Shown in pieces: positions 12,476 through 59,498 of a stretch of 64,000 nucleotides of DNA. The notes below the pieces were generated by a model, which was given only the letters and a program-made list of their open reading frames with translations, made no database searches and had not been told where the DNA came from. Both the position numbers and the translations under genes were made by a program. Source of the DNA: Perna viridis (Eukaryota); assembly GCA_037379345.1 (NCBI GenBank), contig CM074511.1, forward strand, positions 37,082,862 through 37,146,861. Reading direction: 5' to 3'. The stretch's first letter is position 1, and every line of letters starts with the position of its first letter.

Positions 12476-12479
12476 ATGG
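12476..12479 (+). CDS. First coding bases (ATG G) of a putative secreted or membrane protein, at the end of a mostly 5'-UTR exon (possible acceptor tattacag| at 12168)
   Basis: The sequence reads aaaaaATGG|gtaaat, with A at -3, G at +4 and a GT donor at 12480-12481. An in-frame TGA lies upstream at 12449-12451. The phase-1 end matches the open, signal-peptide-like frame of the exon at 29078. Confidence 0.6.
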
Positions 12480-15147
12480 GTAAATAATTTTTCTTATTTA
12501 TTTATCAGGTTGTTTTTTTTTCAAATTGATAATACTGACGTGTTTCATTGATTTATCCATAGTTGAATGGGAGTTTACCTGTCATAAAGGCGAGAAAAAT
12601 GAAATTACATTGTCACGATGGTTTATAATTTATAACATACACTTTAAGTTGAGAAAGAGTGAGTTATTAAATAAATGATCTCCAGTATTATAGAAAGCTG
12701 CTTTATGATTAATTTGATGTAAGTTTCTATAGGCTTGTTTTTTTGACTACATTATGTATTGTCCTTTTTTCTGTTGAATAATGTACCAGGTGTTTCTTCT
12801 AAATATTTGCTGAATGAAAAAAAAATATTAACAAATGCTACATTCAAGTTGACAAATGTTATTGTTGGAAATCAACAATTTTGTTTGAACTTTGAAGAAT
12901 ATTTTTCATTCTGTTTGTCTAGTCCAGGCAATTAGTCTGAATCTTAACTAAATGGAGATGGGAGGCTGTAGGTGGTTTTAAGTGAAATTTAGAAATAAAT
13001 GCTAAATTTCAATGAAAGTAATGAAAAGAACATTTTGGTCTTATTTTGTCTTTAAAATACCACCATGCATGCAAACATTATATGTTTTATTGTATAAACA
13101 CATTGGAGAGAATATTGGCATCAAAGTAACGATTTAACAGATTAATTTGATGATTTCTTCTTAGTTGTCTACAGAAGTTGGATCATTCAATGATCTTTTT
13201 CTCACATAGTAGTGGCATATAAACTTAACGTGAGAAAGTTATGGCTAGAAACATTTTATGTTTATTTTGATATGCTGAAATTGACTGTGTTGGGTAATAA
13301 TGTCTCAATAACAAACATGCAATACTGAAGGTATGCAGCTTGTTTGGAAAGATAATAAACTTAAAGTAGAATGAAGATTCTTAATTTACAAACCATTTAA
13401 TGAGGTGTTAGAAGTGGTATCTGAAAAATCAACATGAAGCACTAATCTAATTACAACTCTGGGGTTCAGAAAAGGGGGTGGTTCAGGCATCTTCAAAACT
13501 CTTTGAAAATTTTTATTTACGAAAGAAGTAGCATGTTGTTTCTCTGAAATTAACTTTTAGTGAACTTTATGAAAACAGTTGCATGCATTGTGGATTGAAA
13601 TCAAAGTGCTTGAGTGCTGAAATGTCTTTTATTTAATATGAAGAACCTGTAAGGGTTCCTTTGATCTGAAATATGAAATTTTTGATAACTTTTTGATTAA
13701 ATTGAAGCGATTTCTCTGGAGATTTAATTGTGATTTGATATAACAGCATGAGGTGTGGAAGTTTGTCCTCTTATCAAATCATTTATATACAGTATAACAA
13801 TTATTTCAAGACACAAGTTGTATTTGTTATGAATTTGGATTATTGCTGTAACTTGTAGATCCAATCCTTAGCTCTGCTACATAGTTAAGATGCATATAGA
13901 TTTATTCAGCCTCTCTGTCCATCTTTTTGTTCCTTATACATTTAATGCCTAAATGTTTTTGAAAGGATGGAGTCAGTTCTGTATATTTGCTTCTCATAGT
14001 TTATCTCCTTGTTAGGTTTTGATTTATGTTAAAAAAAAAACGGCCCTTCTACCAGGATTCTGTGAAGGTTTTGGTCCCAATGTCTTTGTGAAGGCCTTAG
14101 AGCATGCCATTTTTATGGACCTCTGAAGAACCACCATGTTTTTTATTTTACAGATTTGTTAGATGAATGGCTGGTTATATTTAAAGTCAGATAAATGATT
14201 TAAAAGGGTGATATTTTTGCTGCTTGTTTTCTACCAAAAGCCAAAAAAAAAAAAATGCTGAAAGAAACTTTCATTGCAGTCAGTGATGCAAACATATTTT
14301 CATACTGATGTTCTTGTATCTGTAGTTATCCTTAAGAAGTTTTTCTTGAGTGGTAACTTGCAAATTTCACATCTTAACATGCTTCTTTATTTCCATTCCA
14401 ATTGTTTATTTGATAATCCACAGATGACTAAACAATACAATTGAGACTATATATTACATGGCACATGTTTTCATTGAAATAAACAGATTTTTTTGTATGT
14501 TACTAAAATATTCAGCATTACAGTGAGTTTTCTATTTTTAAAAGTTGTTAAATGTCTATGGTTCTTGCCATAACTTAATTAATGTTATTCTATTTCTTCT
14601 GTATTCCTTTCATTTAAATATAAGAAATATGAATGGACCAGCTTTCAACATAGATCTTGTTTTGTATAAATTTAATGCAGTGAGAACATTTTTTCCTTTC
14701 TCTGTGTTTTAATATTAAATTTCACATTAATGATATTGTAATGCTATCCTATGTGCATGAGTTCTGTAATCATCTTACCAAATTACTGTGCATCTGAAAT
14801 ACAATATTGCTATTATTTGAACATTTCCTATCATAAAACAGCTTTATAGTCTCAAATAACTCTTGATTTGGTATTGTAATTCTTCATTAAAAACCGTTTG
14901 AGATTTAATGTTTTTCTTGTCTACTAGGTGTCCATATTGTATTGGGTCATGGAACAAATGTCTCCTATATTTTCACTATTATGTCAGTGGTGTTGTATTA
15001 GTGTTTACTGATGTACTTGGTATCTTCTGGTAGTCAAGATTCTGCATACACTTGGTTTAAAAGTAGAAGAGCCAATTCTGTTATTTTCTTATTGTGGGTA
15101 TTTTTTTTTGTATTATGAGCAATCTTATTGAACTTTTGTATGCTCTG

Positions 15148-15630
15148 TTTAGCTCCTCTTGTGAGCTGTTGTCTCATCACTTTGGTCTTGTTTCCATCAG
15201 TCTGTCTCCTGTCATCATTATCTTTTCTTCAAAAAGACTTCTCCTCTGAAACTTCTACCTCTCCGTGAATTATTACCAAATTTGATCACCAGCATCCTCA
15301 GGGCATCTTCTTTCAATTTCCATTGATAATACATATCATAGCTATTTCTGATCCAATGGGGTCAAGTAAAAAATTTCTACTGATATCTCAAATTTGAAAA
15401 TAAATGTGCCCTTCCTTCTTCAGCTTGAAGAGCTCTATCAAAGACTCTATTGGACTGAAGTTGTATGCTGACACCTTATTAGAGTTATTGCCCTTGGAAG
15501 GTGAAACATGGCCTGTGTATGAAAAATGATGCAGGCATATGATTTATTGTTCTGCTTTATCATATGATATGGCTACCAGACTTTTAATTTTTCCAGGTGA
15601 GCAATTCAGGCTCCGAAGAGCATATCATTT
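15148..15630 (+). mobile_element. Helentron-associated non-autonomous element (HINE/DINE-1/pearl-like), degraded
   Basis: The 5' end has tttAGCTC..., a nearby inverted gtGAGCT and a gtct-rich tract. The interior has cttctcctctgaaact. The 3' end has subterminal CAGGTGAGC, a short hairpin gctc-cgaa-gagc and a T tract. This is the established HINE layout. Confidence 0.7.
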
Positions 15631-17792
15631 GTTATTTTGTCACTGAGTGAATTTATATGTAGACTTGCAAGCTTCTACTTCTACCTACTTCCCAATTCTT
15701 GTTTGGTACTTGTAATACACAAGGCTTATATAAACCCAATTTAAAGCTTTAACAGCAGACATGTATCTTTTTATTCTATCTGGTCTTAATGAGCGGTTTA
15801 AAGTACTGACACACTGGTAGCTTACTTTATTGTTCAAATGTAATGAGCAACTCTAAGCAAAAAAAGGACTTTTTTAGGAACTTAGAAATTTCTTCCACAT
15901 TTGAAGACCAATTAAATTTTCTTTATGTCTAGATTCTATCAAAGTTATCACAATTTATTGCATGAAAACAGAATAGAAAATAAATCAGAAATGATTTAAT
16001 TAGAATTAGTTTCTTTGAAGATTGGAAGGTAACATAGAATCAAACGGGATTGAAGGCCAAAGAAAACATTTATTAACTAATGCAGCCAATTTATTCAAAG
16101 TACAATCCTAAATACTTGCAGTTTACTGCTTCCATCTCTACTAAATTGGGGTTACGATCTCGTGCAAGCCCCATCATCTCCAAAACATAATCATCAAACA
16201 AGTGGATATTGATTGTGAATAAATATTTTCATAAATGGATGGAATCTTCATGATTGAATGATATTATATACATGGGAATGTGTAAAATTGAGTTTGATTT
16301 TTATACAGTTATTAGACCAGAATTATATATTACTTCAAACTATCTTAGGAGGAATGAAAAGTAGGAATGTAAATTCCATCAGAAAATCAATCCATAAAAG
16401 CAATGCAGAAATGCAATACCGTTAATTTCATAAAATGATGATTTTCGGTTTTTATGGAGGGTTTATTTATCAAAATGTTTTTTTGTCTGAATCGTGGGTT
16501 ATGTTGGGAAATCAAGATATTGTTATGTTCAGTGTATGAGTTATTACTTATATTAAGATTTGCCAGTTGGGACTATGAATGATTACCATTTAGCTGAGAG
16601 CTCACTTTGGAGTGTAGGATATTTAATGGTCCACAAAATAATGTAGATATAGATACAGATAATTGACGTTATGATCTGTTTATTGGTACCTTTTTTCCAT
16701 ATTTGGGATGTCTGTAGATATATGCACATACTGGTAATTTGATTTTAGGTTTGACTATGAGAGATGGAACTATTTATACCCGAAATAAAAACTTTGTTGA
16801 TGTAGTACTTTACTGTTTTGGTTGACCATCGGAGAAATGTTAGACTTCTTAGAATAACCTCTCTGCACCTGCTTCAAACATCATCTTCAAACACCACTTT
16901 GAAAATACCCATGTCATTTTGGATGAATGATTATTAGCCATTTATGTTTCAGATCGCTACATATTTAAGATGTCGCTAACACTCCTTTCCTGGGAACATG
17001 ACTTCATAAACATTGAGATTATTTTTTGGAAAAGAAAATTGCTACAATCTGAACTATTTATCAATCATAGCAAAACCAGTATTATATATGACATGATTTG
17101 AAGATGATAGGCACTCTTAGCAATGAAATGACATTTGTCATAGTTGTATCACAGATGGTCTCTAAAAATAATTCATTTATCACATGTATAACTCTACTGT
17201 CATAAAGAAATAGTGAAGTGTGGCTAGTGCTAGTATTTTTTAATTTTATAATTCACATATATGTCTGTTTCTCACTACCCTACCTACCATAAATATTTTA
17301 TGGTTATTTTGGAACTGTTAAAGTCTAGATTGATTCCCCATTAACTTTAACTTGAAGAATTAAGTAATTTCCTTACCTATCTATCCTATTTTTTCTAGCT
17401 GGTAGTAGGAAACAAGATTTTTTTTTGCCTTAGTTTTCTGGAGAAATTCTGGTTGTATCTTAGGGTGCAGCATTTAGATTTTACTAAGAAATTGGTTCTT
17501 TAAACTATACTATGGTTCATTGGCATAGATATCTACCTACATAGTTTTATATATAGGGTTATATCAGGTCAGTATCTCCATTAGGTACATGTATATACCA
17601 TCCAGTTATATACTTATATGTAGATGATACCCCAAATTTGCTGTCCATGTATAAATTTGAATAAATTTATATTAAAAATTGAAAATCTTAAATTGAAAGA
17701 TGTAATTTTAAATGTTTTTGACCTTTGATCATCATGGTTGGTCTTGGCAAAGAAGGTTTACAAATGTCTGAAGGCTGATTGGTCTACAAATG

Positions 17793-17980
17793 TTGGTGTC
17801 TATGGAAGGTCAGCATTAGCACTGATGGTTAGTTGGTCTACAAGGCCAGTCATTATGGCAGACACAAGTATATACATGTACTGGTGTCTGTGGAAGGTCA
17901 ACATTAGTACTTTTGGTTATTTGGTCTACCAGGCCAGTCATTATGACAGACATTGTTGGTTAGTTGGTCTTTGAAGCAAG
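17793..17980. repeat. Imperfect tandem repeat (two copies about 89 bp apart plus a partial third) just upstream of the minisatellite
   Basis: tggtgtctatggaaggtcagcattagcactgatggttagttggtctacaaggccagtcattatggcagaca versus tggtgtctgtggaaggtcaacattagtacttttggttatttggtctaccaggccagtcattatgacagaca. Confidence 0.85.
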
Positions 17981-18093
17981 TCATTATTGGTAGGCATTGA
18001 AAAATCTCTTTATCTTACAAGATTGACAGTAGAGGTTGGTCAGCCTGAAAAACTAGTCATGGTGGTGATCTTGAAGTTAAACTTTTGTACCCA

Positions 18094-19330
18094 GAAGGTT
18101 GGATATGAACCTTTGTCCTCTGAAAGTATGAGATGAACCTTTGTCCTCTGTAAGGTTGGATATGAACCTTTGTCCTCAGAAAGGTATGAGATGAACCTTT
18201 GTCCTCTGAAAGGTTGGATATGAACTTTTGTCCTCTAAAAGGTAGGATATGAACCTTTGTCCTCAGAAAGGTATGAGATGAACCTTTGTCCTCTGAAAGG
18301 TTGGATATGAACCTTTGTCCTCAGAAAGGTATGAGATGAACATTTGTCCTCAGAAAGGTATGAGGTGAACCTTGTCCTCAGAAAGGTATGAGGTGAACCT
18401 TGTCCTTTGAAAAATTGGATATGAACCTTTGTCCTCTGAAAGGTAGGATATGAACCTTTGTCCTCAGAAAGGTATGAGATGAACCTTTGTCCTCTAAAAG
18501 GTTGGGTATGAACCTTTGTCCTCAGAGAGGTATGAGATGAACCTTTGTCCTCAGAAAAGTATGAGATGAACCTTTGCCCTCTGAAAGGTAGGATATGAAC
18601 CTTTGTCCTCAGAAAGGTATGAGATGAACCTTTGTCCTCTAAAAGGTTGGGTATGAACCTTTGTCCTCAGAAAGGTATGAGATGAACCTTTGTCCTCTGA
18701 AAGGTTGGATATGAACATTTGTCCTCTGAAAGGTATGAGATGAACCTTTGTCCTCTGAAAGGTTGGATATGAACCTTTGTCCTCTGAAAGGTCGGATATG
18801 AACCTTTGTCCTCAGAAAGGTATGAGATGAACCTTTGTCCTCTGAAAGGTTGGATATGAACATTTGTCCTCAGAAAGGTATGAGATGAACATTTGTCCTC
18901 TGAAAGGTTGGATACGAACCTTTGTCCTCTGAAAGGTTGGATATGAACCTTTGTCCTCAGAAAGGTATGAGATGAACCTTTGTCCTCAGAAAGGTATGAG
19001 ATGAACCTTTGCCCTCTGAAAGGTTGCATATGAACCTTTGTCCTCTGAAAGGTTGCATATGAACCTTTGTTCTCAGAAAGGTAGTATATGAACCTTTGTC
19101 CTCTGAAAGGTTGGATATGAACTTTTGACCTCTGAAAGGTTGTCATGAGAATATCAGAGATGAACATAGTCTTCAGAAAAAAAACTGGAGATGGACTTTT
19201 GTTGTCAGAAAGGTCAGAGGTTAGCCTTTGTCCTGAGAACGTCAGAGAGTAACCTCATCCGAAGAAAAATTGGAGATAAAGCTTTGTCTTCTGAAACATT
19301 GGAAATAAACTGTGTCCTCAGAAAGGTTGC
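18094..19330. repeat. 29-bp minisatellite: about 36 well-conserved units to ~19140, then about 6 decayed units
   Basis: Units are GAAAGGTTGGATATGAACCTTTGTCCTC(A/T) (type A) and GAAAGGTATGAGATGAACCTTTGTCCTC(T/A) (type B), often alternating. Confidence 0.97.
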
Positions 19331-22300
19331 AAAATTTAGATGATGATTGAACAATGGAATTTTGGTCAGATAATGTGTAAAGAAATGATTTTTTTCTTAG
19401 TGCCGCAGTTTACATCAAAATTTAAATGTTGTGGTTGAAGCAGGTTGTAGTTATCAGTTTAGCAATAGAAACTTGGTGTAATTCTTACAGACATAATCTC
19501 AGTTGGTCCCTCAGCAATCTCCTGCAACATTATCTTCACCCATTAAAATTAAAAAGAAGGTATAATACCACTATTAAGGGGAACCAGTCACATGCACATA
19601 CCAGAAAGTAGTTCGTAAAAAACAAAATAGTTGCTAGGATGCATTGTATATTTTTTTGTGATTTAACCAGTATATCATCTGGGTATCATCTGAAAGCTTA
19701 TTGTGTCAGGTACACACTGAATACAACAGTTTTGAACTCTGATGTAGAGAATAATTTGTTAGAATCTAGATCTTAAGTCCATTGATTTGTCAAATTTTCA
19801 AAAGGAAGTAGTATTTTTAGTACCTGCCTACTTTCACTTCACCGTTCTTTCTTTGAGGCCTTTAAAGGTATGCTGCAAAATTTATGAGAGTCTTTAAAGG
19901 GTTCCCTCTATGATAAAACCTGTTAAAATTCATTTTAACAAACTTTAAAAAAGATTGGGACCTTAAAAACTGCTTAATTTAACTTAGAAAATATAGTAAT
20001 GGGACTTTTAATAGTGGTTTTACACCTAGAAATGTCTACAACTAAGTATACATGTATTACTTTTTAAACCTTAATTTTGGCTCAAAGTTTGTATGTGAAA
20101 ATCTTTCATAAGAAAATTCAGATGCATAAATGGATTTTAGGAGGCAACCTCAAGCTCCCCTTCCCAGTTTATCCCTTTTTGGAATTTCTGAATCCACTAA
20201 TGAGATGAGTAGAATTTTCACATTGACACTTTAAGAGATTGACATTTCTGTGTTTTATTAGTTCACTGGAAATTTTCCTTCACAGTTCTGTATGATTTTT
20301 GTCACAAGATTTTTTTAAAAAATCCCTTTTTGCTGTGTTTTTTTTTTTAACAAATTACAAAAAGCGCCTTCTACCATTAATTAAGAAAAACATGCATTTT
20401 ATTTTGTAATTGTCCTCAAGCACCATACACTAGTGATTACACTCTCAATTTGTCAACAACCTGCAGAAAACAGATACAATTTAATTGAATCTCAAGTGAC
20501 ACAAAAAATATGATTATCACCATTCTGGCTTGACATTTACACCCTGCATCAATCATTTGTTGTAATTCTGACAAATTAAGTTATGATGATATGAATAATT
20601 TAACCATGAATTATGACAATTGTGATGAGATAATAGGCAACTAATGGCAATAAATTGCTGTGGTAGATCACAAAATATAATCTTTTCCCATTTTCGGAAT
20701 GAAAATAGTTGGTATTATAGCATACCTTGAATTGTCCACAGCTCATCACATCAATTTCATGTAAATGAGTTTTGTTCCTTCAAATTAGAGGTTAAGGGCT
20801 CTTTAGTTTAGCATTTGTCATTTTTATTGTTATACTGTAATGTTTTGCTTGAATCATCTTTTTCCTCCAGGATTGGTTGCTCTTAAGTTTTGTCCTGTTT
20901 CTTTCAATGAGAGGATAGTAAGTAATGAGAGAAGTGGGATATCTACAAATTAATTTGGTTGCCATTTTAAGATGTTGAATAATCTGCCTGTTCAGAATCT
21001 TTTTTTCAAACTAGCTGCTACTATGTATTAACTTTATCCTCAGTTTTGAAGATGGATTTCAACACAACATGGGTACATTTGCTTTTTTTCCTAATTTAAA
21101 ACAATCCTTTTTTTCCAATAAAAAATATTTATATTTATAAATGTATACAGTGTGTATCGGTTCCATAAAGGTAGACTATTTTTTTATGTATCTATGTGTT
21201 ACCTTGCAGATCATGTTGCCGTTTTTGAACCATAACAAACATGGGGTCATGAACCATCTTTTACTAGTTCATTAAAAAATTGTCTGTGTATTTCTTTCCT
21301 GCAAGCTGTTGCTATTAAAGTTGGTACATTGGGAGGACTTAGTACTTGAGTAATTGGTCATAAATAGCTATAATTTAATAGATATTGGCAAAGTATATTA
21401 CATATAATCTATCTATTGGGACAAGAAGATCTTTTATTGTGTTATGTATTTGTTTATTGATCCATCTTTCAAAGTTATGGATGAAAGGTATCTTATTTTT
21501 TATGACATTATTGAAGAAAGTCTATGATCAAATGATAATACACTATGTGAAGATCCTGAAATGCTTTGAAGGGGTTCTGATTTAAAAAAAAAAAAAGGGG
21601 GGGTTCAGGATATAATATTTGCTTATTTTACCAAAATTTTACCAAAACACAGAATAAAAAAAAAAAAATTAAAGGAGAGGGTCACTCCCAAAACCTTCCT
21701 CTGGTTCTAGCCAGTATTCAAGTAGTCATGAATATATCAATTTTATATGAGATTTAATTTGCCAAAACAAGCTACTATGGTACTTGCCACAATGTCACTC
21801 TATGTACTGCATATATATCAAAACCTCTTTTTGCTTACCATATATAAATGATATTGGTGGTTTACCAAAGTCTATGTACCAATGATGGATCCTGGTGGTT
21901 CACGTAGGTCAGACCCTCCCCTCTCCTTTTTTGTTGGAACATTTTGTAGATTTTGTGGAAAATTTACATAAAATGAACAAAAGTAGTCTTGTACTGCCTC
22001 TTTTTCTGGAACCCCTCTGACACCCACCTCCCAGTCTTTCTCTTAATGTGCACCTTTATCTCACTTTACTTTTCGTAAGATTTGCTTATGCTTAATCCAT
22101 TCATTCATATACACTCTGAGAATTTGCAGTTCAGTAATGGAAACAATATTACCAGAATAAATATATATATGATGAAAAGAGATACAGTTTTGCTAGTTTA
22201 TTAGCACATAATCACACTAATTGTTCTTCTGTTGGCAAAGAAAATATTGCTTCTTGGTATGTTTGTATTTTGTTTATAATGTAAACAACATTTACCCAGT

Positions 22301-24539
22301 AATATGTAGCTGACTCTGCTGTTGGTCCAAATTATCATCAGAATCTAATGTGCCTGCATGATGTATGGTGCTTAAGATTATGATAAAGTTTATCTTGCTC
22401 TTTCCTAATATAAATGGGTCTCAGAGGCATTGCAGAAGTTTGGCTCCATCTTTGAATAGAAAAACAGACAATTGAAAGTTTAAAGATTTTTATTTTGGAA
22501 CTGTTTGGCATGGACAATATGGATAATAGATATGGTTTTGTCGTCATTGAACTAGATAAGATAAGACATGTGTTTACAACAAAACACATGATAACAATGA
22601 TCAAATAATTATATAAATTTATGAAAATGACTACATAGAATGTTTACCCTAAAATGATGCCATTTACATTCTAAAGGACCAACAAAAAATAGTAGTCTTA
22701 TAAGGGTATAAAAGTATATAGATGTTTTAAAATTGTCATATTGAGCCATACCACAAAAAACTTAGGGTTGGTTTTGGGTAGTGAATTGAACTGTTTTGGA
22801 ATTCGGGGCCAAAAAGAGCATTTCTGTGATATTCAGACAATAACTTGAGTAAAAGAGAACAGATCTTTTCGAAATTGTACCACAAGGTACCATATCTGCT
22901 AAGGAAGGCTGGGATTGATTTTTGGGATATGTTACTGAATCTCTGTGGTGGTATTGAGCAGAATCCTGCTAAGATTTTACTGACTTTCAAAGGTTTTATA
23001 ATTCCTTTCATTAAGGGTTAGGGTTAGATTAATTACCACAAATATTGGTCTTGATCTCTCTCCATAGATCTCCATGGGAATAAACTGTCTTCAACCAATG
23101 TTGAAAAATCATCATGTTTTCTATCATTGGCTACTTTTAAAGTTAGGTATTGATGTACATAAAGAACCTGTTCCCTCTTGTTGAAATATATTTTCACTTT
23201 CAGTAGGTTGTGAGGTTAAGGTTAAACTTCTAAATATATGAAATTTGATATCTATGGTGTTAGCATTCTCATCTTGATAGTAGTAGTTGCCATCATTGAC
23301 CATTGTTTATCTATTTTTTGCTTTTTCTCTATTACTAATTATGAAAATGTTTATCCCTGGTTGATGACAAGTAAAAATATCTTATATCCTGCATTTAAAA
23401 GAAATACTACAAGACAAAAGGCATTAAATAGCATGACACTATCAATAGGAAATGGTTTCAAAATGATAATTTAAACCTTTTATAATATTGGACCACAATC
23501 AAGTAATGACTTCAGTCAAAAAAATACATTATGCAATCAAAAAGCCATCTCATTACACAATAAAGCATGCACTTTGCTGTACTGCCTTTTGACACATTGA
23601 ATTTATCTTTGATAACAATCACATTGGCACTCAGAACACATGAACTGGAGCTAATTTACCAATTATAAGGTACACCTATTAAGATTATCTTGGACTAGAT
23701 TATGATGAATAGAAGAAGAAATTATTTGAACATCTTTGGCAAAGGATAAAAGAGGACATCTTCCCTGAACGAGATATGAAGATATGTCAGTTGATGTTTT
23801 GGATGTTATGTCAGATCCTAATGAAATCTTAAGGGACTGCTAAGTTTCCTTGACAGTTTCTGTTTTCTTCATCTGTCTGATCTTGTCAGTTTCTTTATCA
23901 TTACTTTAAAATTTATTGGCTCATCACCATTGTCATCTCCCAATTTGGGAACTGTTATACGGTTTTTTGTTTTTATTGATGAAACAATGATGGACAAAGA
24001 AATTGGGGATGTTTTTTTTAATTTTGCAGTCTTTTCCATTATAATGATACCGAAACAAATTTTGGGCATATGGTATTTGGTTCTGTTTGTCTGTCAGTAT
24101 GTATTTTGTTTCATTTTTCTAACAAACTTTTCTATGAAGATGATATTATCATGATTTGTATATTACATGTACCTTATAGTTGCCATAGGGAAACGAGTGC
24201 TGAACTTTCATATAAAAATGTCTAGACTATCAGATTTTGTTTCAATATGTTGGGCTGAAATTTTAGGAATGTTGCAACACCTTGATGCTTACTGGGTGGT
24301 GTCAAGCATCAAAATTTGTTGTGAGCAATTAACCTCCCCTCTTTCCTCCCCACTTAATGATGTGGCTGTAAAGAAGTGGAAAGGAAAGGATTGATGAAAT
24401 GTTGACAATATGTTTTGAAGGAGGACAAATTATAGAACATCCGTATTATATTAATAAGGGTGCTTGATCTGTTTGCAAATGCTAGCAATTTTGGTTGCTG
24501 TGCAATTTGAACATTCAGTTTTATTGGATTTCGCTACCC

Positions 24540-48100: not shown

Positions 48101-49960
48101 TTGTGTAACTTTTAAAAATTAGTTATTAAAATATTTTGTCCAATCAATCAAAGGGAGTAGGAGGAATAAGGGCTAGAATAAAAGTTTTGATCAGTGATTT
48201 ATTTCTCTGGTTGTTAGTTCTATTTTTGCTTGCATCTTTTGAAAAAAAAATGAAAATTTATTTTTGAATAATGCTCATCCAGGAATAGGTTTCATTGGTT
48301 TAAGGTCCTGCCTATTTTTTTTTCTTCTGAATTAATACTGCACCTAAAAAAGCAAATGACTTCCCCTCTAGACACAGAATGGAAGATGAAAACTATCCCA
48401 ACATTTACAATGTTAGTTTGATGCAAAAGCATCTTGAAAATTCTGTATATGTGAGAATCAGAGAACACTTTACCCTTAGTGTAACCGGGGTATGTATGAG
48501 TATAAAACAAGTTATATTTTATTCTGTGAACTAAAATAACCAACTGTTTTAATTATTAGTTTATCAAATTCATCACATACAGTTATATCTTAACAGTTCC
48601 TGATGGTTATAATATCGTCATCATTATATTAATGAAATTGGTTTTTTTTTCACTTTCTTTGTTAAGATGTATTTTGTAAATTAATCATTATTATTTTATC
48701 TTATTGAATAGAGTTATCTCCCTTTGAATAGTGTTGTCATGGATTCTGAATACAAAGAGTATCATTAGTAAATATTATTGAGTAAATAAAGTGTCACTTT
48801 ATTGGATAATTTGTTTAAAAAATGGCCATGACACAAAGAATTAATGGTTTAAAAAAAACAATGAATAATTGATAATTGTATTTTGTAATGATTGATGTCA
48901 TCATCAGATGTCAGGAAAAGTTGTTGTAAATTCAATTTTGAATTTTTTAAGAATAAAATACTATCTTTCTATTCCTTTATCATCAGATCATGCCATATTC
49001 TCAGAGTGTTATTTTACATTACAAGATTATTTCTTTTTTTTTTTTAAATTCAAGGTGAAGCTTCAGGAGTGAAATATATTTTGAAGTTCAAAGATTGCCA
49101 ATTGATTTCTAAAAAGTTTCTATAACAGTTTATCTAAGCAGACTCCTGGTGCCTACCTTGCTATCTGTACAGTCAAATATTTAGACTAGATCATTCAACC
49201 AGTAACAGAACTTTACTTCACTCTTCAGCAAAAACAAATGCAAGTAATTCTTGTTTAAATTACCCATTATATATCAAAAGCCAATTTAATGATTGTTTAT
49301 GATAAAATATTGCTTTTTGTTATGTTATTTATTTTATTTCTTTTAATGATCAAAAGCAGTTAGAATTGAATAAAAACCGTGTGACAGACAATTGTGATAT
49401 GGACCCTAAAAAAAGTAGCTGTCTTCCTTATGGTTGATAGACAGCTCTGCGTGTCTTATACATATTTCTTTAATGATGTGCAATATCTTGATTTTGGAAG
49501 TGGTTCACTCATGCATTTTTCATTGCATTTCGATAAGAGATCTTTTGACTTGTACTTGTTGATTGCAAAAAACTTCAGAGCAACATAAACAATAGATTAT
49601 TTGATATATTTTAGTAGTTTCTTTTGCTTTTAAATTTTAGTGTTAAAACATTCTTATGATGTCTTTGATTACTCTATTGAAGATGCTGTGTCATGCGCAG
49701 ACTTCAATCCCATTTTCTACAGAAGTTTTATTTCCAATATTCCATGACTTATAGATAGATCAGCTGATGTTGTCTGTAGCCCCTAACCAGCACATTCCTT
49801 GTACTATGAAAATTTCATTGCAATGTCTCTTTCAGCATTGAAGTATTATGTGTACAACTTCATATATTTTTTTCTCCATAAAACAGAATTGAGCTAGTCT
49901 TATTTTTCATAGTTAGATGTTAGTCAGCAGTAGCTGGTCTTTTTTTAGTTCTTGAAAGGG

Positions 49961-50620
49961 TTTTATAATTCCTGTAAACAAAGCTTGGGCTTATTTAGGA
50001 ATCAGGTTTTTAATCTGTCTGTCTGTCAGGTTGTTTGTCTAAATATTTTAGAAGTGTAACTCCTTCTAAACCGTTGAATGGATTTCGACGGAATTTTAAA
50101 GGAAGATTGGAAAAGATATTTAAATGTGAATGAAGGAAGAAAATCGTTGTCTGATATGTGCAAAAATGGAGAGAATTCAATTTACGGCTTTTATGTATGA
50201 AAATCTTACAAACTTCTCCTAAACCATTCAAATGAATTAAATGAAATTTTAGAGGAAGGTTAGTCATCACAAGTAGATGAGCATGGAACATTATTTCCAA
50301 TGCCAGCAAAGGAGATATTCTACCATTAGTGTTCAACATTTTTCAATTCTAGCAACCCCAACATCTCAACCACTTGATTTAAACAACATTTTATAGCAAG
50401 GTGAGGTGTTAAAAATGATGTACATGCAGGAAGATGATTATTGTCCAGTGCCTGCAAAGGCTAAAATACGAACTGAATTGATATTCAGACATGCATGTAA
50501 GTGCAACTTCTCCTCAATAAATTTTTGGAGTTAGATGAAATTTCATAGGAAGGTTAGGAATTATGTTTAATGTACATGAATAAAATTTTAAACTAATGTT
50601 AGGTCACTACAAAAGGAAAT
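49961..50620 (+). mobile_element. HINE-like element with decayed ~150-bp internal tandem repeats
   Basis: A (tctg)n tract near 50014 is followed by aact(t/c)c..ctaaacc...gaaatttt..aggaag blocks at about 50054, 50211, 50368 and 50501. Confidence 0.6.
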
Positions 50621-53600
50621 TATCCGATCTAGTGATTTAGCATGATTTTAGTCTACTCTAATTTTTGGGTTAACCTTACAATATTTCTTGGTATGGTACA
50701 ACTTTGCTCTTATTGATACATGGGTTCTAGTTTATATTTTTTGGCTGAAGTGCTTTATACTTACTACTTTATTTGTCAAAGTATTAACAGAAATTTGATA
50801 TATGATTGGCTGGAGTTAGCTCTGTTTGTTTCATAGTGTTTCACAAATAGTGGCATTGAGCTTGATTTGGTATTTTCTTTGATTGGTGGACCTTTTACAA
50901 TTTAGATCATTGCTTGATTCAAAATATATATGAATAACTTTGTAAAGTGTCTGTCTTTGTCAATGTATTTGGTTAATTCAGGGGTTGGTTTATATAGGTC
51001 TCATTGTAAAATATATTGGTGCCTTGGTTGGAAAGGTTGACTGTTTAAGAACTAAGAAAGATTCCAAATTTTGGGTTTTAAAAGTGCATGATGATTACAG
51101 TTCTGCAGTTGACCCTTTAATAAATGAGCCAACACCTCTGTCCTACATGATCTTAAAAGAACATTAAGCTCTTTGAATGTGAGAACAAGATCAGAATTGT
51201 TTATCTGAAAATATACCATTGATGAGCTATTAGCATGTATTTGAACTGCAGTGGCAATAAAATATTTTGTCAGGAAAATACTCAAGGGTCACATTAGCAA
51301 GATTTTCTAAGTTCATGATAGATATACATGTAAAATAAATTAGATTGCACAAACTAAGAGTCATTACACTCTGATATGTAGGTATATACTGTCTTGTTTC
51401 ACCATTGTACCCATGGGTATTGCTGATGATGATTAAAAATGATGTTTTCATCAGCTTTCCTGTTCAGAGTTTCTTCATTTTGATGGGTCGATAAGTTACA
51501 CTGCTCATCGTCTTATTGATTAAAGTGCACAAAAATTGTTTATGGTATTAAAGCTGTGAAGCAGAGGTGTATATTTTGTATGAAATTACCATGCATTGTT
51601 TTCTGATGTCTTTCTGCATGCAATGTTCAAAATGACAAGAAGGCTGATAATTAGAACTATGAACTTCCTTGTGATGACACCTTGTCTCCTATGTCAGATT
51701 CCAGTAGGAAATAAGCTAAAAGAATTGTCTGAAATTAAGAAACAAATATGACTACTGTTAAAAGTTTGATTAAATATTTAATTCTCAACCAATAGTATTT
51801 AATTAGCTTTCATTTTGTTTTCATTCATCTGCCAAAAAAAGGTGTGCCCCTTTTTGCCCCAAAAAACGGTCTAAGAAATGATTCAGTTGGATTATTCAAC
51901 TTTGACTTTAAGATACTTCTAAAGTAAACTAACGAGGCCAAATCAGATGACCTCTGTTTCCTGTTGCATAAAAGAGGGTCCTTAAGTCAGGATTTTATTT
52001 TATATTATTTACTGATTTTTAAGCATCTTATTTACCACCCGGACCTTGTGGAAACCGAAAATTTATCACTATCTGTAAAATATTGGGTCATTTGTTGGTA
52101 CTTTTTGTTGTTTGTTATCTTGAAAATAATTCAGTTGGGTAACTGGAACAGAGGTATAATTTAATTTGGCCTTACTGATATTGTAATTCTGCCTGTAGCT
52201 ATAAAATTGAACTGAAAACAATGACAAAAAAGGACAGAGCTGGAATCATAAATGATTTTTCCTATGGCCAATATTTGAGTTAATGAATTTCAGCTCAAAG
52301 ATGAGAAAATTCTATGACTGAAGACTCTTCAAAGTTTTGACATGCAAAAAAATAACTGACTCATAGTTCTTTCTTATGTTGACAAACTTCCTTAAAATAA
52401 AAATATTACATCAGTTTGATTTGAATGGAAAAAAAATAAAGAAGTCTGCCTTTAAATATGCAAATTGAGAAACAGTCGTAATTAGATATTTAGAAAATAA
52501 CTTGTCATATGGTGTCTTAAAGGAATTCAAATCTGAGAGATATCGCTTTACATTTAATTTATCCCCTGAAGAAGACAAATAGTCCCAACAATATAAAAAC
52601 ATTTTTTGAAGAGATACCCTGTTATTTTCATCACTTTGTTTATCATAGACATTGAAGTTTAAAAAAGGCAACTTGAGAATGTTAGAGAGCATTTGTGATA
52701 TCCCAAGGGACATTACCTATGGGTGGTTGTACTTTAATGTTTTTTATATTTTATAGGTCAACATGTCCTTGGAGACGCCTGCAAAATTTAGTCAACTTTC
52801 ATGGTTGCACAATTACCATGATATGCAATAAATTAAAAAAGAAATTGTTGAGTCATAAACAGGAACTGTTTTGAAATGATGGGGCGGACAGGGGAGTACC
52901 TTTCTCCTTTATCCCACCCTTCTCTCCTATCTGCCACCCCTTTTCTACCTTTGTCCCTTTCCCCTGTCAGCCATCCCAGAAAAGAATGAATGTTTTACCT
53001 AATTCATCCAGCGCCTTTTCAATTTTATCCTTTTTGCAATAGTGCAACAAAAATGTTGAGAAGTAGTTTTTTTCTTCATTTGATAGGTTTTTGGCAGGAT
53101 ATGGAAAAATATATGAACTTTGATTCTCAAGTATTTATCTCTAGTGCAAGCTTTCAAAAAATAGATGTGAATTACTTCAGCTTCCAAAAGTAGAGCAATT
53201 TAGACAGTGAATAAGATATTGTCTTACTTGTTTTACCTATTTAAATGAAAGCCTATCTTTATGAATGGGTTACACATGGTGAGGTGAAACCCCATTTTTT
53301 ACACTCAGAATTACTTGAGAAATGAAGAGATCAAGTTTGAACAGAATCAGATGAACATTTGGACTTTATCCCAGATTTTGTAGAAGAATGAACTTTCTTA
53401 TCCAGTCCTTAGTGATCAATGTCTTTGAACCAGACTTCAAAAACAAAATTATCCTATCTAAGATATAGAGGTGTCCATATAATCCAACAATTGTTTATAA
53501 AGGATTTTATTTGGTGTTAAAACTTCCATTATGATGGTAAAGTTTAATCCATACTCAGATTCAATTGATCAAGGATATAAAAAAAAAGCAAAATTTTAGT

Positions 53601-55526
53601 ATCTATAAGTAAAGCCTGCAAAGATATAACATGTATTTTTAAAAGATCGTCTGGTATCCATTTATGCAAATCTTTGGCTTACTGAAAAGAAATATCTGAA
53701 TTTAGAAAGGAAAAGAAATAAGAATGAACTTTATTCATGTCAGGAAGGAAGATCTAGGCACCATTTTTTTCAATCTTGTGAAACTACTTGATTATAACTC
53801 TAGAGTAATTAATGGGGAGGAAAGGAGTATGAAAGTTTAAGAACTTGTTTTTAACTTTTTTCATTATTATTATTATTGTTTTATTTGTTTTTGTCTTTCA
53901 TCTGTTGGCATGAACTGTTTAAAAATGACCATGGTATTTGTTTCTGTTATCTCCCTTGGCAAAAATTGGAAAAGAAAAAACAACTGCCCTGGACTGTGGC
54001 CAGCGGGTCAGTAGTTGGGTTTTGCCCTTACTTGTTTTTAAGACTACAAACTACTTCCTGAGATAATAGATGAAATCTTTTACAGGTGGGAAAAGAAGAT
54101 AAACATTGATAAAACTCATAAAAATCCTAATTCCTACTGGCTATAAATCAAAATACAATAATTTACTAACTAAGATGAAATTATACTGGTAGTTGCCAAA
54201 GCAATCTGATAATGGAGCATTTTTCCTACAACTTGGCAACTTGTTTTGAATTGATGATATCAATTTGTGTTGAAATTGCTACAAAGTTCCTTTATTTATT
54301 ACTTAAAGAACATGACCTATCGTAAAAATCACAGAATGTCATTATTTTTGTTAATAACATCAAAGTGAACACCTTGTTATCAAGTAACCACTCAACCTGG
54401 CAAAAGGTTTCTCAACATTTGTCAATTTTTCTGTTAGAAATATTGATGAGATAAAAATCAAGGCGGTTCCATTGGAGTTTTTCTTAGATAATCATGAATT
54501 ATCAATATATTTCAACACTATGAAATTTCACTCATTTAGCTGAAAAATTTGGTTTGGAATTCAAAACCCCTTTGAAACAGTTGTAATTCAATTTGATTTA
54601 AGGCTATAGTAAAAAGACAAGAAGTGCCAATGTCCTCTAGAATTTACAATTTAGGAAGTTGGGTCCAAGGATTTAGTGCAAATTATACCCAAAGAGCCAG
54701 AAATATTAATTGTTTCTTTCAAAATAAGGGAAAAGAACAATGGTTGCAGATTCTGATTTCATAATTGTAATCATTATTTCCTGAGAGTAAAATAATGCAA
54801 TCGTCAACATGGTGCCATTCTACTAATTTAGGACAGAAACAAATTGTGTTGGAAAAACCAGATGACGAAACTATATTCTGAATCCATTTTGGGAAAAACT
54901 CGTGAAAAATTCCTAGAGACTCTTATAGACTACCATTTTTAAAATGATTTGGTTAGAAATCAATCCTATGACCTCCCATGTGCAGGTCAGTTTCATTTAT
55001 CTGAGGGTTTAAACTTCAGATTGATTTTACATGGAAGTATGTTCTTTTTTGACACACCATTAGTACATTAACCATTTCGGCAAATTTAGAGCAAAAGTCC
55101 AAAAACTTTCATCCTGAACAAAACATCTTCTAAGCCTCTCTTAGTATTTTTCCCAGTCATTGTAGATTTTTCTCATCACAATACAAGACAATATGTTTTA
55201 ATTATCCCATCATCATTTTTTTGGGAATCTAATTTTTCATTTTATGACATCCCTTTTCCACCAAGTTCACTACAACAAAACAACTAAATATTCATATATT
55301 TTTGGTAGACTATGTATTTCTGACAAGAGTCTGCATTTTTGTCTGGTTAATGAGGTTTTTGGGTCAAAAAATTAAAACATGAAAGGATTCCCAGTCATGA
55401 ATTCATTTATCATGCAATTTATTCAAGCTTTTATGAATTGCTTATTGATATCATACAAACTCCTTTATTGTGGTCAGGTCATATTCATTGTATGTATATT
55501 TATGTTCTGTGCAAACAATCAGATTA

Positions 55527-55743
55527 CAGTGAAACCTGTCTAAACTGGACCCCTTTTTGGTTTCAAAATTGGTTCAATTTGACAAATGTTTGGTTTTTCA
55601 AGGTTCAAAAATATATTTAAACTGATATAAAGGAACTTTTTAAAAGTGGTAAAACTTTTTAAAATTTCTGCCGTAGACTGCCGTAGACTGCCGTAGACTG
55701 GTCTTCAAAGTTTGGTCTTCAAAGTTTGGTTTTGATTTCAGTG
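55527..55743. mobile_element. TA-flanked MITE, family copy 3, carrying internal micro-duplications
   Basis: ta|CAGTGAAACCTGTCTAAAC at the left end and a partly deleted right TIR ggttttgatttcagtg|ta. Internal similarity to 32687-32849. Contains (ctgccgtaga)x3 and (tggtcttcaaagtt)x2. Confidence 0.7.
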
Positions 55744-55828
55744 TATTTTTACTCTAAATAATGGTTTGTTGTTTTTTCTTAACTTATGAAATTATTATTT
55801 TTTGTTTTGTTTTTGTTTTTAAGAAATT

Positions 55829-56084
55829 GGGAATTTTGCATTGGAATATTTCATAATCTAAAAGACAGACGCCACTTGACATTTTTCATGGTCTAAGAGA
55901 GATAACTCTCATAAATTTCCTGTTATAAGATGCAAAAAACAATAACTGTCATTTGGGGGAATTTTGCATTGGAATATTTCATAATCTAAAAGACAGACGC
56001 CACTTGACATTTTTCATGGTCTAAGAGAGATAACTCTCATAAATTTCCTGTTATAAGATGCAAAAAACAATAACTGTCATTTGG
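55829..56084. repeat. Perfect 128-bp tandem duplication
   Basis: 55829-55956 and 55957-56084 are identical by eye (gggaattttgcattgg...aataactgtcatttgg). Confidence 0.95.
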
Positions 56085-59000
56085 CTTGATGACAAGGGCT
56101 TTCGAATTGTCTCTGTTCTTTTATGTTAAGTGTTTCTTCTAAGTTTATTGTGATCTTATAATTTGAGGTCACAATAAAAGCTCCATAAATTTATCCATTT
56201 ATGGCTGAAATTTCCTGCAGTATGTTCTAAGTACTTCATGAAATAAAGTGCAGTATCTCAACAATCTTATTGATGTTGATGCTATGGGCTGTAAAAATTA
56301 TAGAGGCAAGTTTCTGTTTTTATAGTATACCCAGTTTCTGTTCTTTTTCATTAAAAGCTTATCAAGAGTGCCAACTTCGCTATTTTCAATAATTATAGTA
56401 ACAGGCATCCAGCGTATCTAAATCAACTAAGAGGTTGATTCTAATGACTTCAGAATTTATAGCTCTTTCTCAACTCAAACATTGCAATTTGCAAATTTTT
56501 AATGATTATCATAATGCATTACCTTTACATTTAATTTGACAGAAATGATAATTCTAGGCTCTGATAACAAGGGTAGGAACATTTTCAGAAATGATTTGAT
56601 GTGACGGGGTGTTCTAGACCACAAAGATTGTTGATAACTTATTCCATGGGTGGCCATAGCTTAACAATTACTGACTCTTTGGTATGATGTAATTTTTCAT
56701 GATAAATATTATCTTTAAGCCTATTCTTATTATACCCTGTCATGCACCAAATTATGCAAGTTACTGTTTTTATGTCCGTTTGAAAATGTGCATCTGATGT
56801 GATGTTGAAAGGTCAACACTCCCCACTGTTTAAATGTTTATTTATGTTACCAGTAAAATGCAAATTAACTTGCTAAGTGGAATATTGTTATAAAATGTGA
56901 TGGGAGTATCAGTCATATGAAACAGTTGTGTTTTTTTATAAACTCCACCTTTTTTAATAAAATTTTAATTGAGTTTTGAGGTGAAAAAGTTAAACTCTTT
57001 TAATTACTTTAGAATGAAATGTTTGTAGTGTGGAGCTTGCACTGCACAAGTTAGCAAATTTAGATATTCTGAAAAGGGGACTTCTGACAGACCTTAGAGT
57101 GATTTCACTAGGTATTTCTAGTTTTTTTCTATTAAAATAAATCAAATTTTTAAATCATAAGGTTCTTAGAGTCTTAGGTTCTCTCCCCCTACTTAATTGG
57201 AGTGGCCTGTTTGCAGTAGTTTATAACTTCTATTTTGCTCTGCAAGACCGGTATGAACTTTAATGTTATATGATATTGAAACAAATCCTACTATAAAAAA
57301 AAATCAAAACATCTGTTCTGTGATTGCATACAGTTTTGAGTGTAAAAAAAAATCATATCTTTAGTAGAAAAATAATGTACTTAATATTTACTCAAGATGT
57401 TTATCTATGATAATTTACATAGACACACGCTCAATAATTTTACTTCGAGTCTTTTGTTCCGTTATGCTCTTACATCACTTTCAGCTTCTTAACTGTTAAT
57501 TAGATTTTAAACCATATAATTCTAGTACAAATGTTCAAGTGTCATAGAAAAAAAAGACAGAAAACCATTTCCTTATAATCAAGCGTCTCACAAATCGATA
57601 GACTGACTCACAGTGCTGTAATTTTATGACTCGAATACACCTCTAAATGGTTGAATAATGAAGCCATGTCTATAAAAAGGATCCGATTATTTTACATTTC
57701 TCATTAGATCTGGGCATGAAATTGTTAAAGCTTGCCAAATTCGGTTATCATTCAAGTGGGATAGTATTTCAGTCTATCCATCAATCTGTTTTGTTTTCTC
57801 TCTCAAAATCATAGGTTTTGCAGTGAAATGTGGAATGGTTAATTCCATGTTTATAAATCACGCAGCTTGCTGAAGAAAAGACATGAGATAATTATGTTTA
57901 ATTTCCTTCTGAGTTTTAAGATTTTTTTAACAAAAATATAAAGGATATTATCTTTCAAAGAAAATGCAAAGGATGCATGTATCATATTCATGATTTTCTG
58001 TATGCAGATTTCTTACAAAAAAATCAGTGCATTACTTTCCATATATGAAACTATAACTCCAACAATTATTGTATTGTTATTGGAAGTGGTGCTGACATTT
58101 CAGGTTGTAAAATTCACACTATTGACACATGTTTTTTTTTCAGAATTGTAAGCCACAATTTTTTTATTTGGTGAAACTAAGTATTTTTTGTTTTTGTTTT
58201 CAATCTTTCAGAAGTTATAATATTGTTCAAAATTAAAAGGTTTTGTCTAGTTTATCCTGATTATTAATGTGGTGGTATTTTTTTTTCTTCTTTTCTCCCA
58301 TTTTATTTTGCATATTGGTATAAGTACTTAAATTTAAAACACAAGTCAGGTTCACTCACTTTTCATACAAGAAGTCACTGTTTAAAGAAACAATTTTGGC
58401 CAATCTTCTGACACAAGTTAATTAAGCAATCAGTAGATAAACATTTTGATCTTGTATCAGAAAACATATCTAAATGCCTGTGCAATGAGGCTTCCCTAAT
58501 GATTCATTATTAAAGAAGACATATGAACTAGAAGAAATCCCTTCAGTTTGACATAGTTGTTTAGATTTATAACATTTTTAAGGGAGGATTAGTGAAAAAG
58601 ATAGTGTTGACAAAATCAGATGCATATAAACAGCTGTATTTGCAAGTTAATTTTGTTTCCAATAGTCTCAAAATGATGTATGTTTATGTAAGAGGAGTCC
58701 AGAAACTCCACAATTATTGAGCATTGATCATGTATAAGAAATAAGACGATGTTATGTAAGGGCATGCCAATCTCTAAGCAATAGATGCTCTGTAGCTACT
58801 GATTAACTGTGAATGAACTCAAGCAAGGAAGTTAGCTGTTAAAAAATGATAAAGTTGGAGCCTTCATTTATTAGAAAACTACTTTTTTATTAGATTTCTC
58901 TTTCTTTATTCTAAAAAGCTTGTTTTAACTGATTTTTTTTCCTTTTAAAAATTAGTTTTCTCAATGATTAAGATGTCAATCGTAGAAAAAAAACCATTTT

Positions 59001-59431
59001 AGTGTACATGTATAAAGATTATGGTCAAACTACTGTTGAATACAGATGCTGATCCAGGATTCTTAACATTATGAATGTGAAAATAGGTCATTAGGAATCA
59101 AAGGGGAGCTCCAAATTGAGTTTAACTTCTGAAAGGGCCCCATTTCATCCTTTAATTTGTCTGTTTTAAGTCAGAACCCTTGGTTTACATCAAGTGTAGA
59201 AAGAATGACAACAGATGCAGAAATTTATTTCTAAAAAGGAGGGGTTCCAATCCAGAAATTTATTTGGTGTCCAGGCTATCATTTGCCCATTTAGCACAAA
59301 ATTAACAATAATTTTCCAATATATGGAGCAGCTGGATTTGTCATGGGTTAACTCATCTTTGTTGAAATTTAATCATATAACATTTACATTTAGTATACTG
59401 TTGATTGTATAATAATTTTTTTTTATTACAG

Positions 59432-59498
59432 TCTATGGTCAGATGGACAAAGCAGCTGATCTCAGTGATGAATCTTACAGACAGACAGACAGTTCACA
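59432..59498 (+). CDS. 67-nt coding exon (phase 1/2) encoding (V)YGQMDKAADLSDESYRQTDSS: signal-peptidase site and mature N-terminus
   Basis: Acceptor ttttttttattacag| and donor CA|gtaagt. Joined to 29137 it gives V-Y-G|Q, which fits the -3/-1 cleavage rule, followed by a hydrophilic stretch. Confidence 0.7.

What the first reader, a model, noticed from the sequence alone, without database searches (positions are those of the whole stretch)
12476..59498. Hidden gene: a signal peptide assembled from three tiny coding exons spread over 47 kb
Seen in sequence: three isolated GT-AG-bounded segments (4, 60 and 67 coding nt) have matching phases (1, 1). They join to MELKLKSQCLLLSVYSILLLQVYG|QMDKAADLSDESYRQTDSS, with a good start context and an in-frame stop upstream. 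Established knowledge: a basic n-region, a hydrophobic h-region and small residues at -3/-1 define a cleavable signal peptide, and an N-terminal Gln can cyclise to pyroglutamate. Inference: nearly the whole window is the 5' end of a giant gene for a secreted or cell-surface protein, with introns of 16,598 and 30,294 bp. Ab initio annotation would probably miss this N-terminus. The protein family cannot be named from 43 residues.
Basis: partly seen in the sequence, partly recalled or inferred. Interest (0 to 1): 0.75.

Follow-up and report, generated by a model that had tools for sequence, protein, structure and literature searches.

The report
Mussel ROR receptor gene's 5' micro-exons
The three tiny exons are real and are spliced together in RNA; they encode the signal peptide of an ordinary ROR-family receptor tyrosine kinase gene whose first 54 codons are spread over about 88 kb.

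Summary

- **Exons:** all three segments sit at the stated coordinates with GT-AG borders.
- **RNA:** reads and contigs laid on exon 2 continue upstream into the 30 letters ending at the ATG of window 12476. They continue downstream into the first 30 letters of exon 3. This holds in two contig runs from different studies and in 9 and 10 raw reads of a stranded RNA run.
- **Rest of the gene:** it lies downstream of the window. There is a fourth 32-nt micro-exon 25 kb on, then exons for an Ig domain, a Frizzled cysteine-rich domain, a Kringle, a membrane span and a tyrosine kinase.
- **Family:** the gene is a ROR-family receptor. Its last exon is 88% identical to Mytilus edulis "ROR1-like isoform X4".
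- **Model:** 14 coding exons and 984 codons over 100 kb. The first 163 coding bases take 87.5% of that span.
- **Annotation:** RefSeq Mytilus models already carry this N-terminus.

Novelty is low: a correct de novo call of a known kind of gene.

The parts
12449..12479 (+). 3' end of exon 1: 5' UTR with an in-frame TGA at 12449, start codon at 12476-12478, plus one G. The 5' limit of the exon is unknown.
   Evidence: The sequence is ATGG|gtaaat. The 30 letters that run on before exon 2 in X3, X5 and X21 (9 reads) equal 12449-12478. Contigs carry 101 to 377 letters before exon 2, so the UTR is longer than shown here, but those letters were not displayed.
12480..29077 (+). Intron 1, 16,598 bp, phase 1.
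   Evidence: Bounded by gtaaat and ttttacag. The junction is seen in RNA.
29078..29137 (+). Exon 2, 60 nt: n-region and hydrophobic core of the signal peptide.
   Evidence: Depth is confined to these three bins. In stranded run X21 the first mates lie on the - strand (12, 12 and 10.6 against 0), so the RNA is + strand. Seventeen runs from 7 studies hold 3 of 9 sampled words of the 141-nt stretch, as expected if they hold only the exon.
29138..59431 (+). Intron 2, 30,294 bp, phase 1.
   Evidence: Bounded by gtaagt and ttattacag. The junction is seen in RNA.
59432..59498 (+). Exon 3, 67 nt: end of the signal peptide (V-Y-G), the proposed cleavage site, and the acidic N-terminus of the mature protein.
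   Evidence: Its first 30 letters are the loose end behind exon 2 in X3, X5 and X21 (10 reads, agreement 1). 18 of 21 residues are identical to Mytilus P0002. It is unique in the genome: only the self match covers it.
59499..64000 (+). First 4.5 kb of intron 3. The intron is phase 2 and 25,022 bp long, and ends at L007:520. Exon 4 is L007:521-552, outside the window.
   Evidence: The donor is gtaagt. Exon 4 was found by a motif scan and has ag/gtaagt borders and the right phases. Its residues match P0002 and P0141.

Best explanation
The three segments are the first three coding exons of this mussel's ROR-family receptor tyrosine kinase gene.

- Exon 1 gives the 5' UTR, the ATG and one G.
- Exon 2 gives the charged n-region and the hydrophobic core of a signal peptide.
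- Exon 3 gives the V-Y-G end of the signal peptide and an acidic stretch that begins the mature protein.
- A fourth 32-nt micro-exon (L007:521-552) links these in frame to the Ig exon at L008:6151.
- Nine more exons follow. They encode the rest of the Ig domain, a linker, a Frizzled cysteine-rich domain, a Kringle, one membrane span, a tyrosine kinase with all canonical catalytic motifs, and a Ser/Thr- and Pro-rich tail.

The signal peptide would send the Ig-Frizzled-Kringle part across the ER membrane, and the receptor would end up in the cell membrane. By analogy with studied RORs it would act as a Wnt5a-type (co)receptor.

Shown here: the splice junctions 1-2 and 2-3, + strand transcription, the domain content, and orthology to annotated Mytilus ROR. 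Inferred: junctions 3-4 and 4-5 (from homology, splice signals and phases), signal-peptide cleavage after V-Y-G, and ligand and function.
For: **RNA:** both junctions appear in two contig runs from different studies and in 9 and 10 raw reads of a stranded RNA run. Depth covers the three exon bins and is 0 in all bins behind the exon.

**Word index:** 17 non-genomic runs from 7 studies hold just the exon's share of the sampled words.

**Downstream open frames on the same strand hit Pfam:**
- I-set, 34.4 and 34.1 bits against a cut-off of 23.7
- Fz, 37.0 against 32.1
- Kringle halves, 32.3 and 29.6
- PK_Tyr_Ser-Thr, 325.8

**Relatives:** the last exon finds 4808 proteins at E<=1e-30 among 8000 scored. 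The best named one is Mytilus edulis ROR1-like isoform X4, at 88% identity over 97% of the query. The kinase's best solved relatives are human ROR1 (E 1.2e-125) and ROR2.

**N-termini:** those of P0002, P0123, P0133 and P0141 match exons 2, 3 and 4.

**Start codon:** the second residue is D, E or G in the three mytilid lineages. All three have codons that begin with G, as the ATGG| split demands.

**Intact model:** exon borders worked out exon by exon give GT-AG throughout, consistent phases, and 2955 nt, that is 984 codons plus a stop. Mytilus has 982 residues.
Against: - Junctions 3-4 and onward were not seen in RNA letters here. Only 30 letters of each loose end are shown, and read laying has one call.
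- Agreement among the 9 X21 reads for the upstream partner is 0.83, so a minority may carry other letters. That could be polymorphism, error, or another first exon.
- No signal-peptide predictor was run.
- The exon 12 donor is a weak gttggt.
- No full-length protein of this species was in the protein collection. The best hit is P0001, 97% identical and covering the last exon only.
Confidence: 0.96

Rival explanations
1. Exons 1-3 are transcribed, but exons 1 and 2 serve only as 5' UTR. Translation would start at an ATG inside exon 3, as in the older Mytilus edulis model CAG2207502.
For: Exon 3 holds two ATGs. P0124 and P0127 start with the residues of the in-frame one. An out-of-frame ATG sits at 12448, upstream of the proposed start.
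Against: That product would lack any hydrophobic N-terminus: the best 10-residue mean in P0124 is 0.2, yet the protein has extracellular domains and one membrane span. The ATG at 12476 has A at -3 and G at +4 and follows an in-frame stop. The exon 2 frame is open and its peptide is kept in three mytilid lineages, including transcript-derived P0141. RefSeq models start at the exon 1 ATG.
Confidence: 0.02
2. The exon at 12476 is only one of several first exons. Another promoter or first exon, as in Mytilus edulis isoforms X1 and X2, supplies the main N-terminus in some tissues.
For: M. edulis isoforms X1 and X2 (P0130, P0122) begin with a different 13-residue first exon joined to the same exon 2. 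Agreement of the X21 upstream loose end is 0.83, not 1.
Against: Every upstream consensus shown (X3, X5, X21) is the 12449-12478 sequence. A BLOSUM62 scan of window 1-29077 for the Mytilus alternative first exon scored 24, the same as the minus-strand control. This rival would add to the main reading, not replace it.
Confidence: 0.15
3. The three segments are a chance assembly of splice-like sites with no common transcript.
For: ATGG|GT is common: 7 sites upstream of exon 2 in the window. Four coding bases carry almost no information.
Against: Junction-spanning contigs and reads. Near-identity of the encoded peptide to annotated orthologues.
Confidence: 0.005

Closest known systems
Mytilus edulis 'inactive tyrosine-protein kinase transmembrane receptor ROR1-like isoform X4' (XP_071177130.1; P0002), with M. 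californianus, M. galloprovincialis and M. coruscus ROR models
   Same: The length is 982 aa against 984 predicted codons here. The domain order is the same. The last exon is 88% identical. The N-terminus has the same layout: a signal peptide ending in QVYG, then QM and an acidic stretch, then the exon 4 peptide, then the Ig domain.
   Different: The species or genus differs (88%, not about 100%). The second residue is E here and D in Mytilus. The hydrophobic core has diverged. Mytilus has isoforms with an extra 11-residue micro-exon between exons 3 and 4, and isoforms with another first exon. Neither was found here above the control score.
Human ROR1 and ROR2 (PDB 6tu9, 3zzw, 4gt4)
   Same: They are the best solved relatives of the kinase domain, at E 1.2e-125 and 9.7e-115. 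The architecture is the same: Ig, Frizzled cysteine-rich domain, Kringle, membrane span, kinase, Ser/Thr- and Pro-rich tail (passages of the review PMC4085287). A signal-peptide first exon followed by a very large first intron is what I recall for the human genes; this was not checked here.
   Different: The mussel kinase keeps GEGQFG, HRD and DFG. The aligned human chains read GECAFG, HKD and DLG in ROR1, and GEDRFG, HKD and DLG in ROR2. The word 'inactive' in the RefSeq name is therefore inherited from human ROR1 and may not fit the mussel protein. In the mussel the signal peptide is split over three exons.
Aplysia Ror (McKay et al. 2001, seen only as cited in PMC4085287)
   Same: A mollusc ROR homologue, reported to cluster on the surface of neuroendocrine cells (passage).
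   Different: I did not see that paper or its sequence, and made no comparison of N-terminus or gene structure.
MuSK and Trk receptor kinases
   Same: They are the next best named kinase-domain relatives in the PDB search, at E about 1e-92 to 1e-91, level with one EGF-receptor chain. MuSK also has Ig and Frizzled-like domains (recalled).
   Different: They score about 110 bits lower than ROR1. The Kringle domain and the ROR-named orthologues place this gene in ROR.

Membership tests
ROR family of receptor tyrosine kinases | Extracellular Ig-like domain | tested here: met
   I-set scored 34.4 and 34.1 bits on the two Ig exons, against a cut-off of 23.7.
ROR family of receptor tyrosine kinases | Frizzled-type cysteine-rich domain | tested here: met
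   Fz (PF01392) scored 37.0 bits against a cut-off of 32.1 on L009:3865-4110. The exon before it aligns with the start of the Mytilus cysteine-rich domain.
ROR family of receptor tyrosine kinases | Membrane-proximal Kringle domain | tested here: met
   The Kringle is split over two exons. The halves scored 32.3 bits (profile 1-35) and 29.6 bits (profile 49-79). Each is below the whole-domain cut-off of 34.3, but together they cover the profile, and they align with the Mytilus Kringle. The halves were not joined for a single score.
ROR family of receptor tyrosine kinases | Single membrane span followed by a tyrosine kinase domain closest to ROR1 and ROR2 | tested here: met
   A hydrophobic stretch followed by basic residues precedes the kinase in the last exon. 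PK_Tyr_Ser-Thr scored 325.8 bits. The best PDB matches are ROR1 and ROR2.
ROR family of receptor tyrosine kinases | Ser/Thr-rich and Pro-rich C-terminal tail | tested here: met
   This is seen directly in the last-exon translation and aligns with Mytilus ROR to the last residue.
ROR family of receptor tyrosine kinases | Binds Wnt5a-type ligands through the cysteine-rich domain | not testable with these tools
   Known for vertebrate RORs (passages of PMC4085287). There is no binding test here.
Cleavable N-terminal signal peptide (Sec type) | Short charged n-region and a hydrophobic h-region of about 7-15 residues | tested here: met
   Exon 2 whole codons have two Lys and then a 12-residue hydrophobic run. 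The best 10-residue Kyte-Doolittle mean is 2.48, against 2.6 to 3.5 for the ROR N-termini of eight other bivalves.
Cleavable N-terminal signal peptide (Sec type) | Small or neutral residues at -3 and -1 before the cleavage site | tested here: inconclusive
   V at -3 and G at -1 fit the rule as I recall it, and QVYGQM is kept in three mytilid lineages. No predictor was run, and the joined peptide was not built or submitted.
Cleavable N-terminal signal peptide (Sec type) | Actual cleavage, and Gln-to-pyroglutamate at the new N-terminus | not testable with these tools
   This needs N-terminal sequencing or mass spectrometry of the mature protein.

The most novel reading that the evidence does not exclude
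The most novel reading not excluded is that the mussel ROR locus makes a further N-terminal isoform through an exon that has not been found. Contigs of two independent runs both stop exactly 30 letters into exon 4. A 31-letter word graph does this where two paths merge, and Mytilus has such isoforms. In this reading the 88 kb that hold only 54 codons persist because they carry alternative exons or promoters and regulatory DNA for a catalytically competent ROR kinase (canonical GxGxxG, HRD and DFG motifs, unlike the human pseudokinase-like ROR1 and ROR2).
Probability: 0.35. Interest if true: 0.2.

Novelty: already known. Interest (0 to 1): 0.15.

Why it matters
**For annotation:** the true N-terminus and signal peptide of this species' ROR receptor lie 88-100 kb upstream of the exons that homology searches find. 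One of these exons carries only four coding bases. Gene models built without RNA can miss them: two published bivalve models lack the signal peptide.

**For the scan:** it shows that a reader working from sequence alone can assemble a correct signal peptide from micro-exons.

**For biology:** it adds little. ROR receptors, their domain plan and this same N-terminus in Mytilus are already in public databases. The canonical catalytic motifs suggest that the label 'inactive' does not fit mollusc RORs.

Tried and rejected
1. **Exon 3 joined straight to the Ig exon: rejected.** Exon 3 ends with two bases of a codon, and the Ig exon starts with two bases of a codon. Read that way, either the Ig domain goes out of frame or exon 2 has stops. 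The missing 32-nt exon 4 was then found.

2. **Search for an N-terminal protein fragment of this species.** The aim was to reach its transcript contig and map the 5' UTR. It returned 1 protein of 16 candidates (P0149, 102 aa, 68% identity over 38% of the query), which is not the N-terminus. It led nowhere.

4. **Scan for the Mytilus alternative micro-exon and alternative first exon.** The best BLOSUM62 scores were 25 and 24, against 25 and 24 on the minus-strand control, so there is no signal. This does not exclude diverged counterparts.

5. **Other genes in the window.** There were 0 Rfam matches at gathering score. Of 7 long open frames, 0 had a Pfam hit above cut-off; one had a sub-threshold DUF7078 match of 18.9 bits against 23. 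Nothing else was found.

6. **Earlier notes of the scan.** None lay near this place, and none mentioned ROR, Kringle or Frizzled.

7. The big representative protein search, structure prediction and the atlas were not used, because the family was already clear. Phases and split codons were worked out by hand, exon by exon. Supplementary files of papers were not asked for.
Full report
**The observation.**
- Exon 1 ends ATGG|gtaaat at 12479 and is preceded by AAAAAAA.
- Exon 2 is 29078-29137, behind a long pyrimidine tract and ag, and before gtaagt.
- Exon 3 is 59432-59498, with the same kind of borders.
- The in-frame stop is a TGA at 12449.
- The introns measure 16,598 and 30,294 bp.

Exon 1 was the weak point. 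ATGG|GT occurs 7 times on the + strand upstream of exon 2 within the window. The site at 12476 merely has the best donor and start context.

**RNA.** The run index listed 24 runs for a 141-nt stretch around exon 2.
- Three runs of one sample hold all 9 sampled words. These are probably the source DNA.
- Seventeen runs from 7 studies hold 3 of 9. By my arithmetic the 60-nt exon accounts for 30 of the 111 possible 31-letter words, so this is what holding the exon alone would give.

I laid three contig runs from three studies and one raw stranded RNA run on window 28818-29417.
- Depth covers the three bins 29078-29137 and is 0 in every bin behind them. Before the exon, two short repeats carry depth (see 'Surroundings').
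- The letters running on before the exon are those of window 12449-12478. This holds in X3, X5 and 9 reads of X21 (agreement 0.83).
- The letters running on behind are the first 30 of exon 3. This holds in X3, X5 and 10 reads of X21 (agreement 1).
- X10 has a 747-nt contig across the exon, but its loose ends were not among the rows shown.
- In X21 all first mates on the exon lie on the - strand. In the usual stranded library this means + strand RNA.

Junctions 12479^29078 and 29137^59432 are therefore real.

**What the gene is.** I fetched 100 kb downstream of the window. The + strand holds open frames with these Pfam hits:
- I-set: 34.4 and 34.1 bits
- Fz: 37.0 bits
- Kringle: two halves, 32.3 and 29.6 bits
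- a 569-residue last frame with a membrane span and a tyrosine kinase: 325.8 bits

The last frame finds 4808 proteins at E<=1e-30 among 8000 scored. The best named one is Mytilus edulis ROR1-like isoform X4 (88% identity), followed by ROR proteins of oysters, scallops, clams and gastropods. The kinase's best solved relatives are human ROR1 and ROR2. This is the ROR family domain plan as described in the review PMC4085287 (passages seen).

The organism is coded. From the 88% identity to Mytilus, and from earlier notes that call it a mussel, it is a mytilid other than Mytilus.

**The frame.** The N-terminus of P0002 begins MDLKKSQHLVIGLCFILVLQVYGQMEKRADISDESYRQTDSS.
- Exon 3 whole codons match it at 18 of 21 residues. 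Exon 2 aligns over its full length with one gap.
- A transcript-derived protein of a third mytilid lineage (P0141) keeps QVYGQM, DESY and DSS.
- The second residue is D, E or G in the three lineages. All have codons starting with G, as the ATGG| split requires.

Exon 3 cannot join the Ig exon directly, because the phases are 2 and 1. The orthologues have about 11 more residues there. A motif scan found them in a 32-nt exon at L007:521-552, with ag and gtaagt borders and the right phases.

The other borders were worked out exon by exon. The gene has 14 coding exons, GT-AG throughout, and 2955 nt, that is 984 codons plus a stop, over 100,157 bp. The first 163 coding bases end 87.7 kb before... 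more exactly, exon 5 starts 87,675 bp after the ATG. I did not build, print or search the joined sequence.

**Signal peptide.** Exon 2 gives two lysines and a 12-residue hydrophobic run. Its best 10-residue mean is 2.48, against 2.6 to 3.5 in eight other bivalve ROR N-termini. V and G stand at -3 and -1 before a conserved Q. A type I receptor with extracellular Ig, Frizzled and Kringle domains needs such a peptide. Cleavage and pyroglutamate formation remain inference.

**Annotation.** RefSeq models of M. edulis, M. californianus and M. galloprovincialis, and one M. coruscus model, have this N-terminus. M. edulis CAG2207502, CAG2207501 and CAG2207503 and the Pinctada imbricata model do not.

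**Against, or open.**
- Junctions from exon 3 onward rest on homology and signals, not on RNA letters seen here.
- The 0.83 agreement leaves room for a minor alternative upstream exon.
- Mytilus has isoforms with another first exon and with an extra micro-exon. I found no counterpart above the control score.
- Contigs of X3 and X5 both end 97 letters behind exon 2, which is 67 plus 30. This would fit a second path merging at exon 4, or a variant at exon 4 base 31. It is untested.

**Surroundings.** There are no Rfam matches and no Pfam-supported open frame elsewhere in the window. The window also holds:
- a 29-nt x 36 minisatellite at 18095-19140, and a perfect 128-nt duplication at 55829-56084;
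- short repeats at 28884-28913, 29003-49 and 59212-59319 that match other places.

**Verdict.** The thing is an ordinary, already known kind of gene: the 5' micro-exons of a ROR receptor tyrosine kinase.

Noticed in passing
L009:6957-8632 (last exon, outside the window): The mussel ROR kinase keeps GEGQFG, VAIK, HRDLATRN and DFG. The aligned human ROR1 and ROR2 chains read GECAFG or GEDRFG, HKD and DLG. The RefSeq word 'inactive' for mollusc orthologues therefore looks inherited rather than earned.
   Followed up: partly
window 29078-29137 and L007:521-552: Contigs of two independent runs (X3 and X5) both end exactly 97 letters behind exon 2, which is 30 letters into exon 4. This is what a 31-letter word graph does where a second path merges, so it hints at another isoform entering exon 4. 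A variant at base 31 would do the same.
   Followed up: no
window 12448-12450: An out-of-frame ATG in weak context lies 28 nt upstream of the start codon. The RNA letters displayed begin at 12449, one base inside it, so the ATG itself was not seen in RNA. It would open a reading frame that overlaps the main start (read by hand).
   Followed up: no
window 18095-19140: A minisatellite of a 29-nt unit x 36 copies (85% matches) lies in intron 1. It produces the long spurious open frames on the minus strand.
   Followed up: no
window 55829-56084: A perfect tandem duplication of a 128-nt unit lies in intron 2.
   Followed up: no
window 29003-29049: A stretch of about 45 nt just upstream of the exon 2 acceptor is matched at 90-95% by abundant transcripts that run on unlike at both ends (word depth up to 642 in X10). 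It is a short repeat family expressed elsewhere, not part of this mRNA.
   Followed up: partly
window 59212-59319: A repeat just upstream of exon 3 has at least 11 other copies in the genome, at 72-88% identity.
   Followed up: no
window 8422-8853 (- strand): A 144-residue open frame with no Pfam match. From memory it looks like a fragment of a mobile-element protein common in mollusc genomes; I did not check this.
   Followed up: no
L007:9170-9706 (intron 4, outside the window): A tandem repeat gives two overlapping repetitive open frames of 179 and 119 residues on the + strand.
   Followed up: no
L009:5820-5822 (outside the window): The donor of exon 12 is gttggt, the only weak donor in the model. 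The border is set by phase and by alignment to Mytilus.
   Followed up: partly
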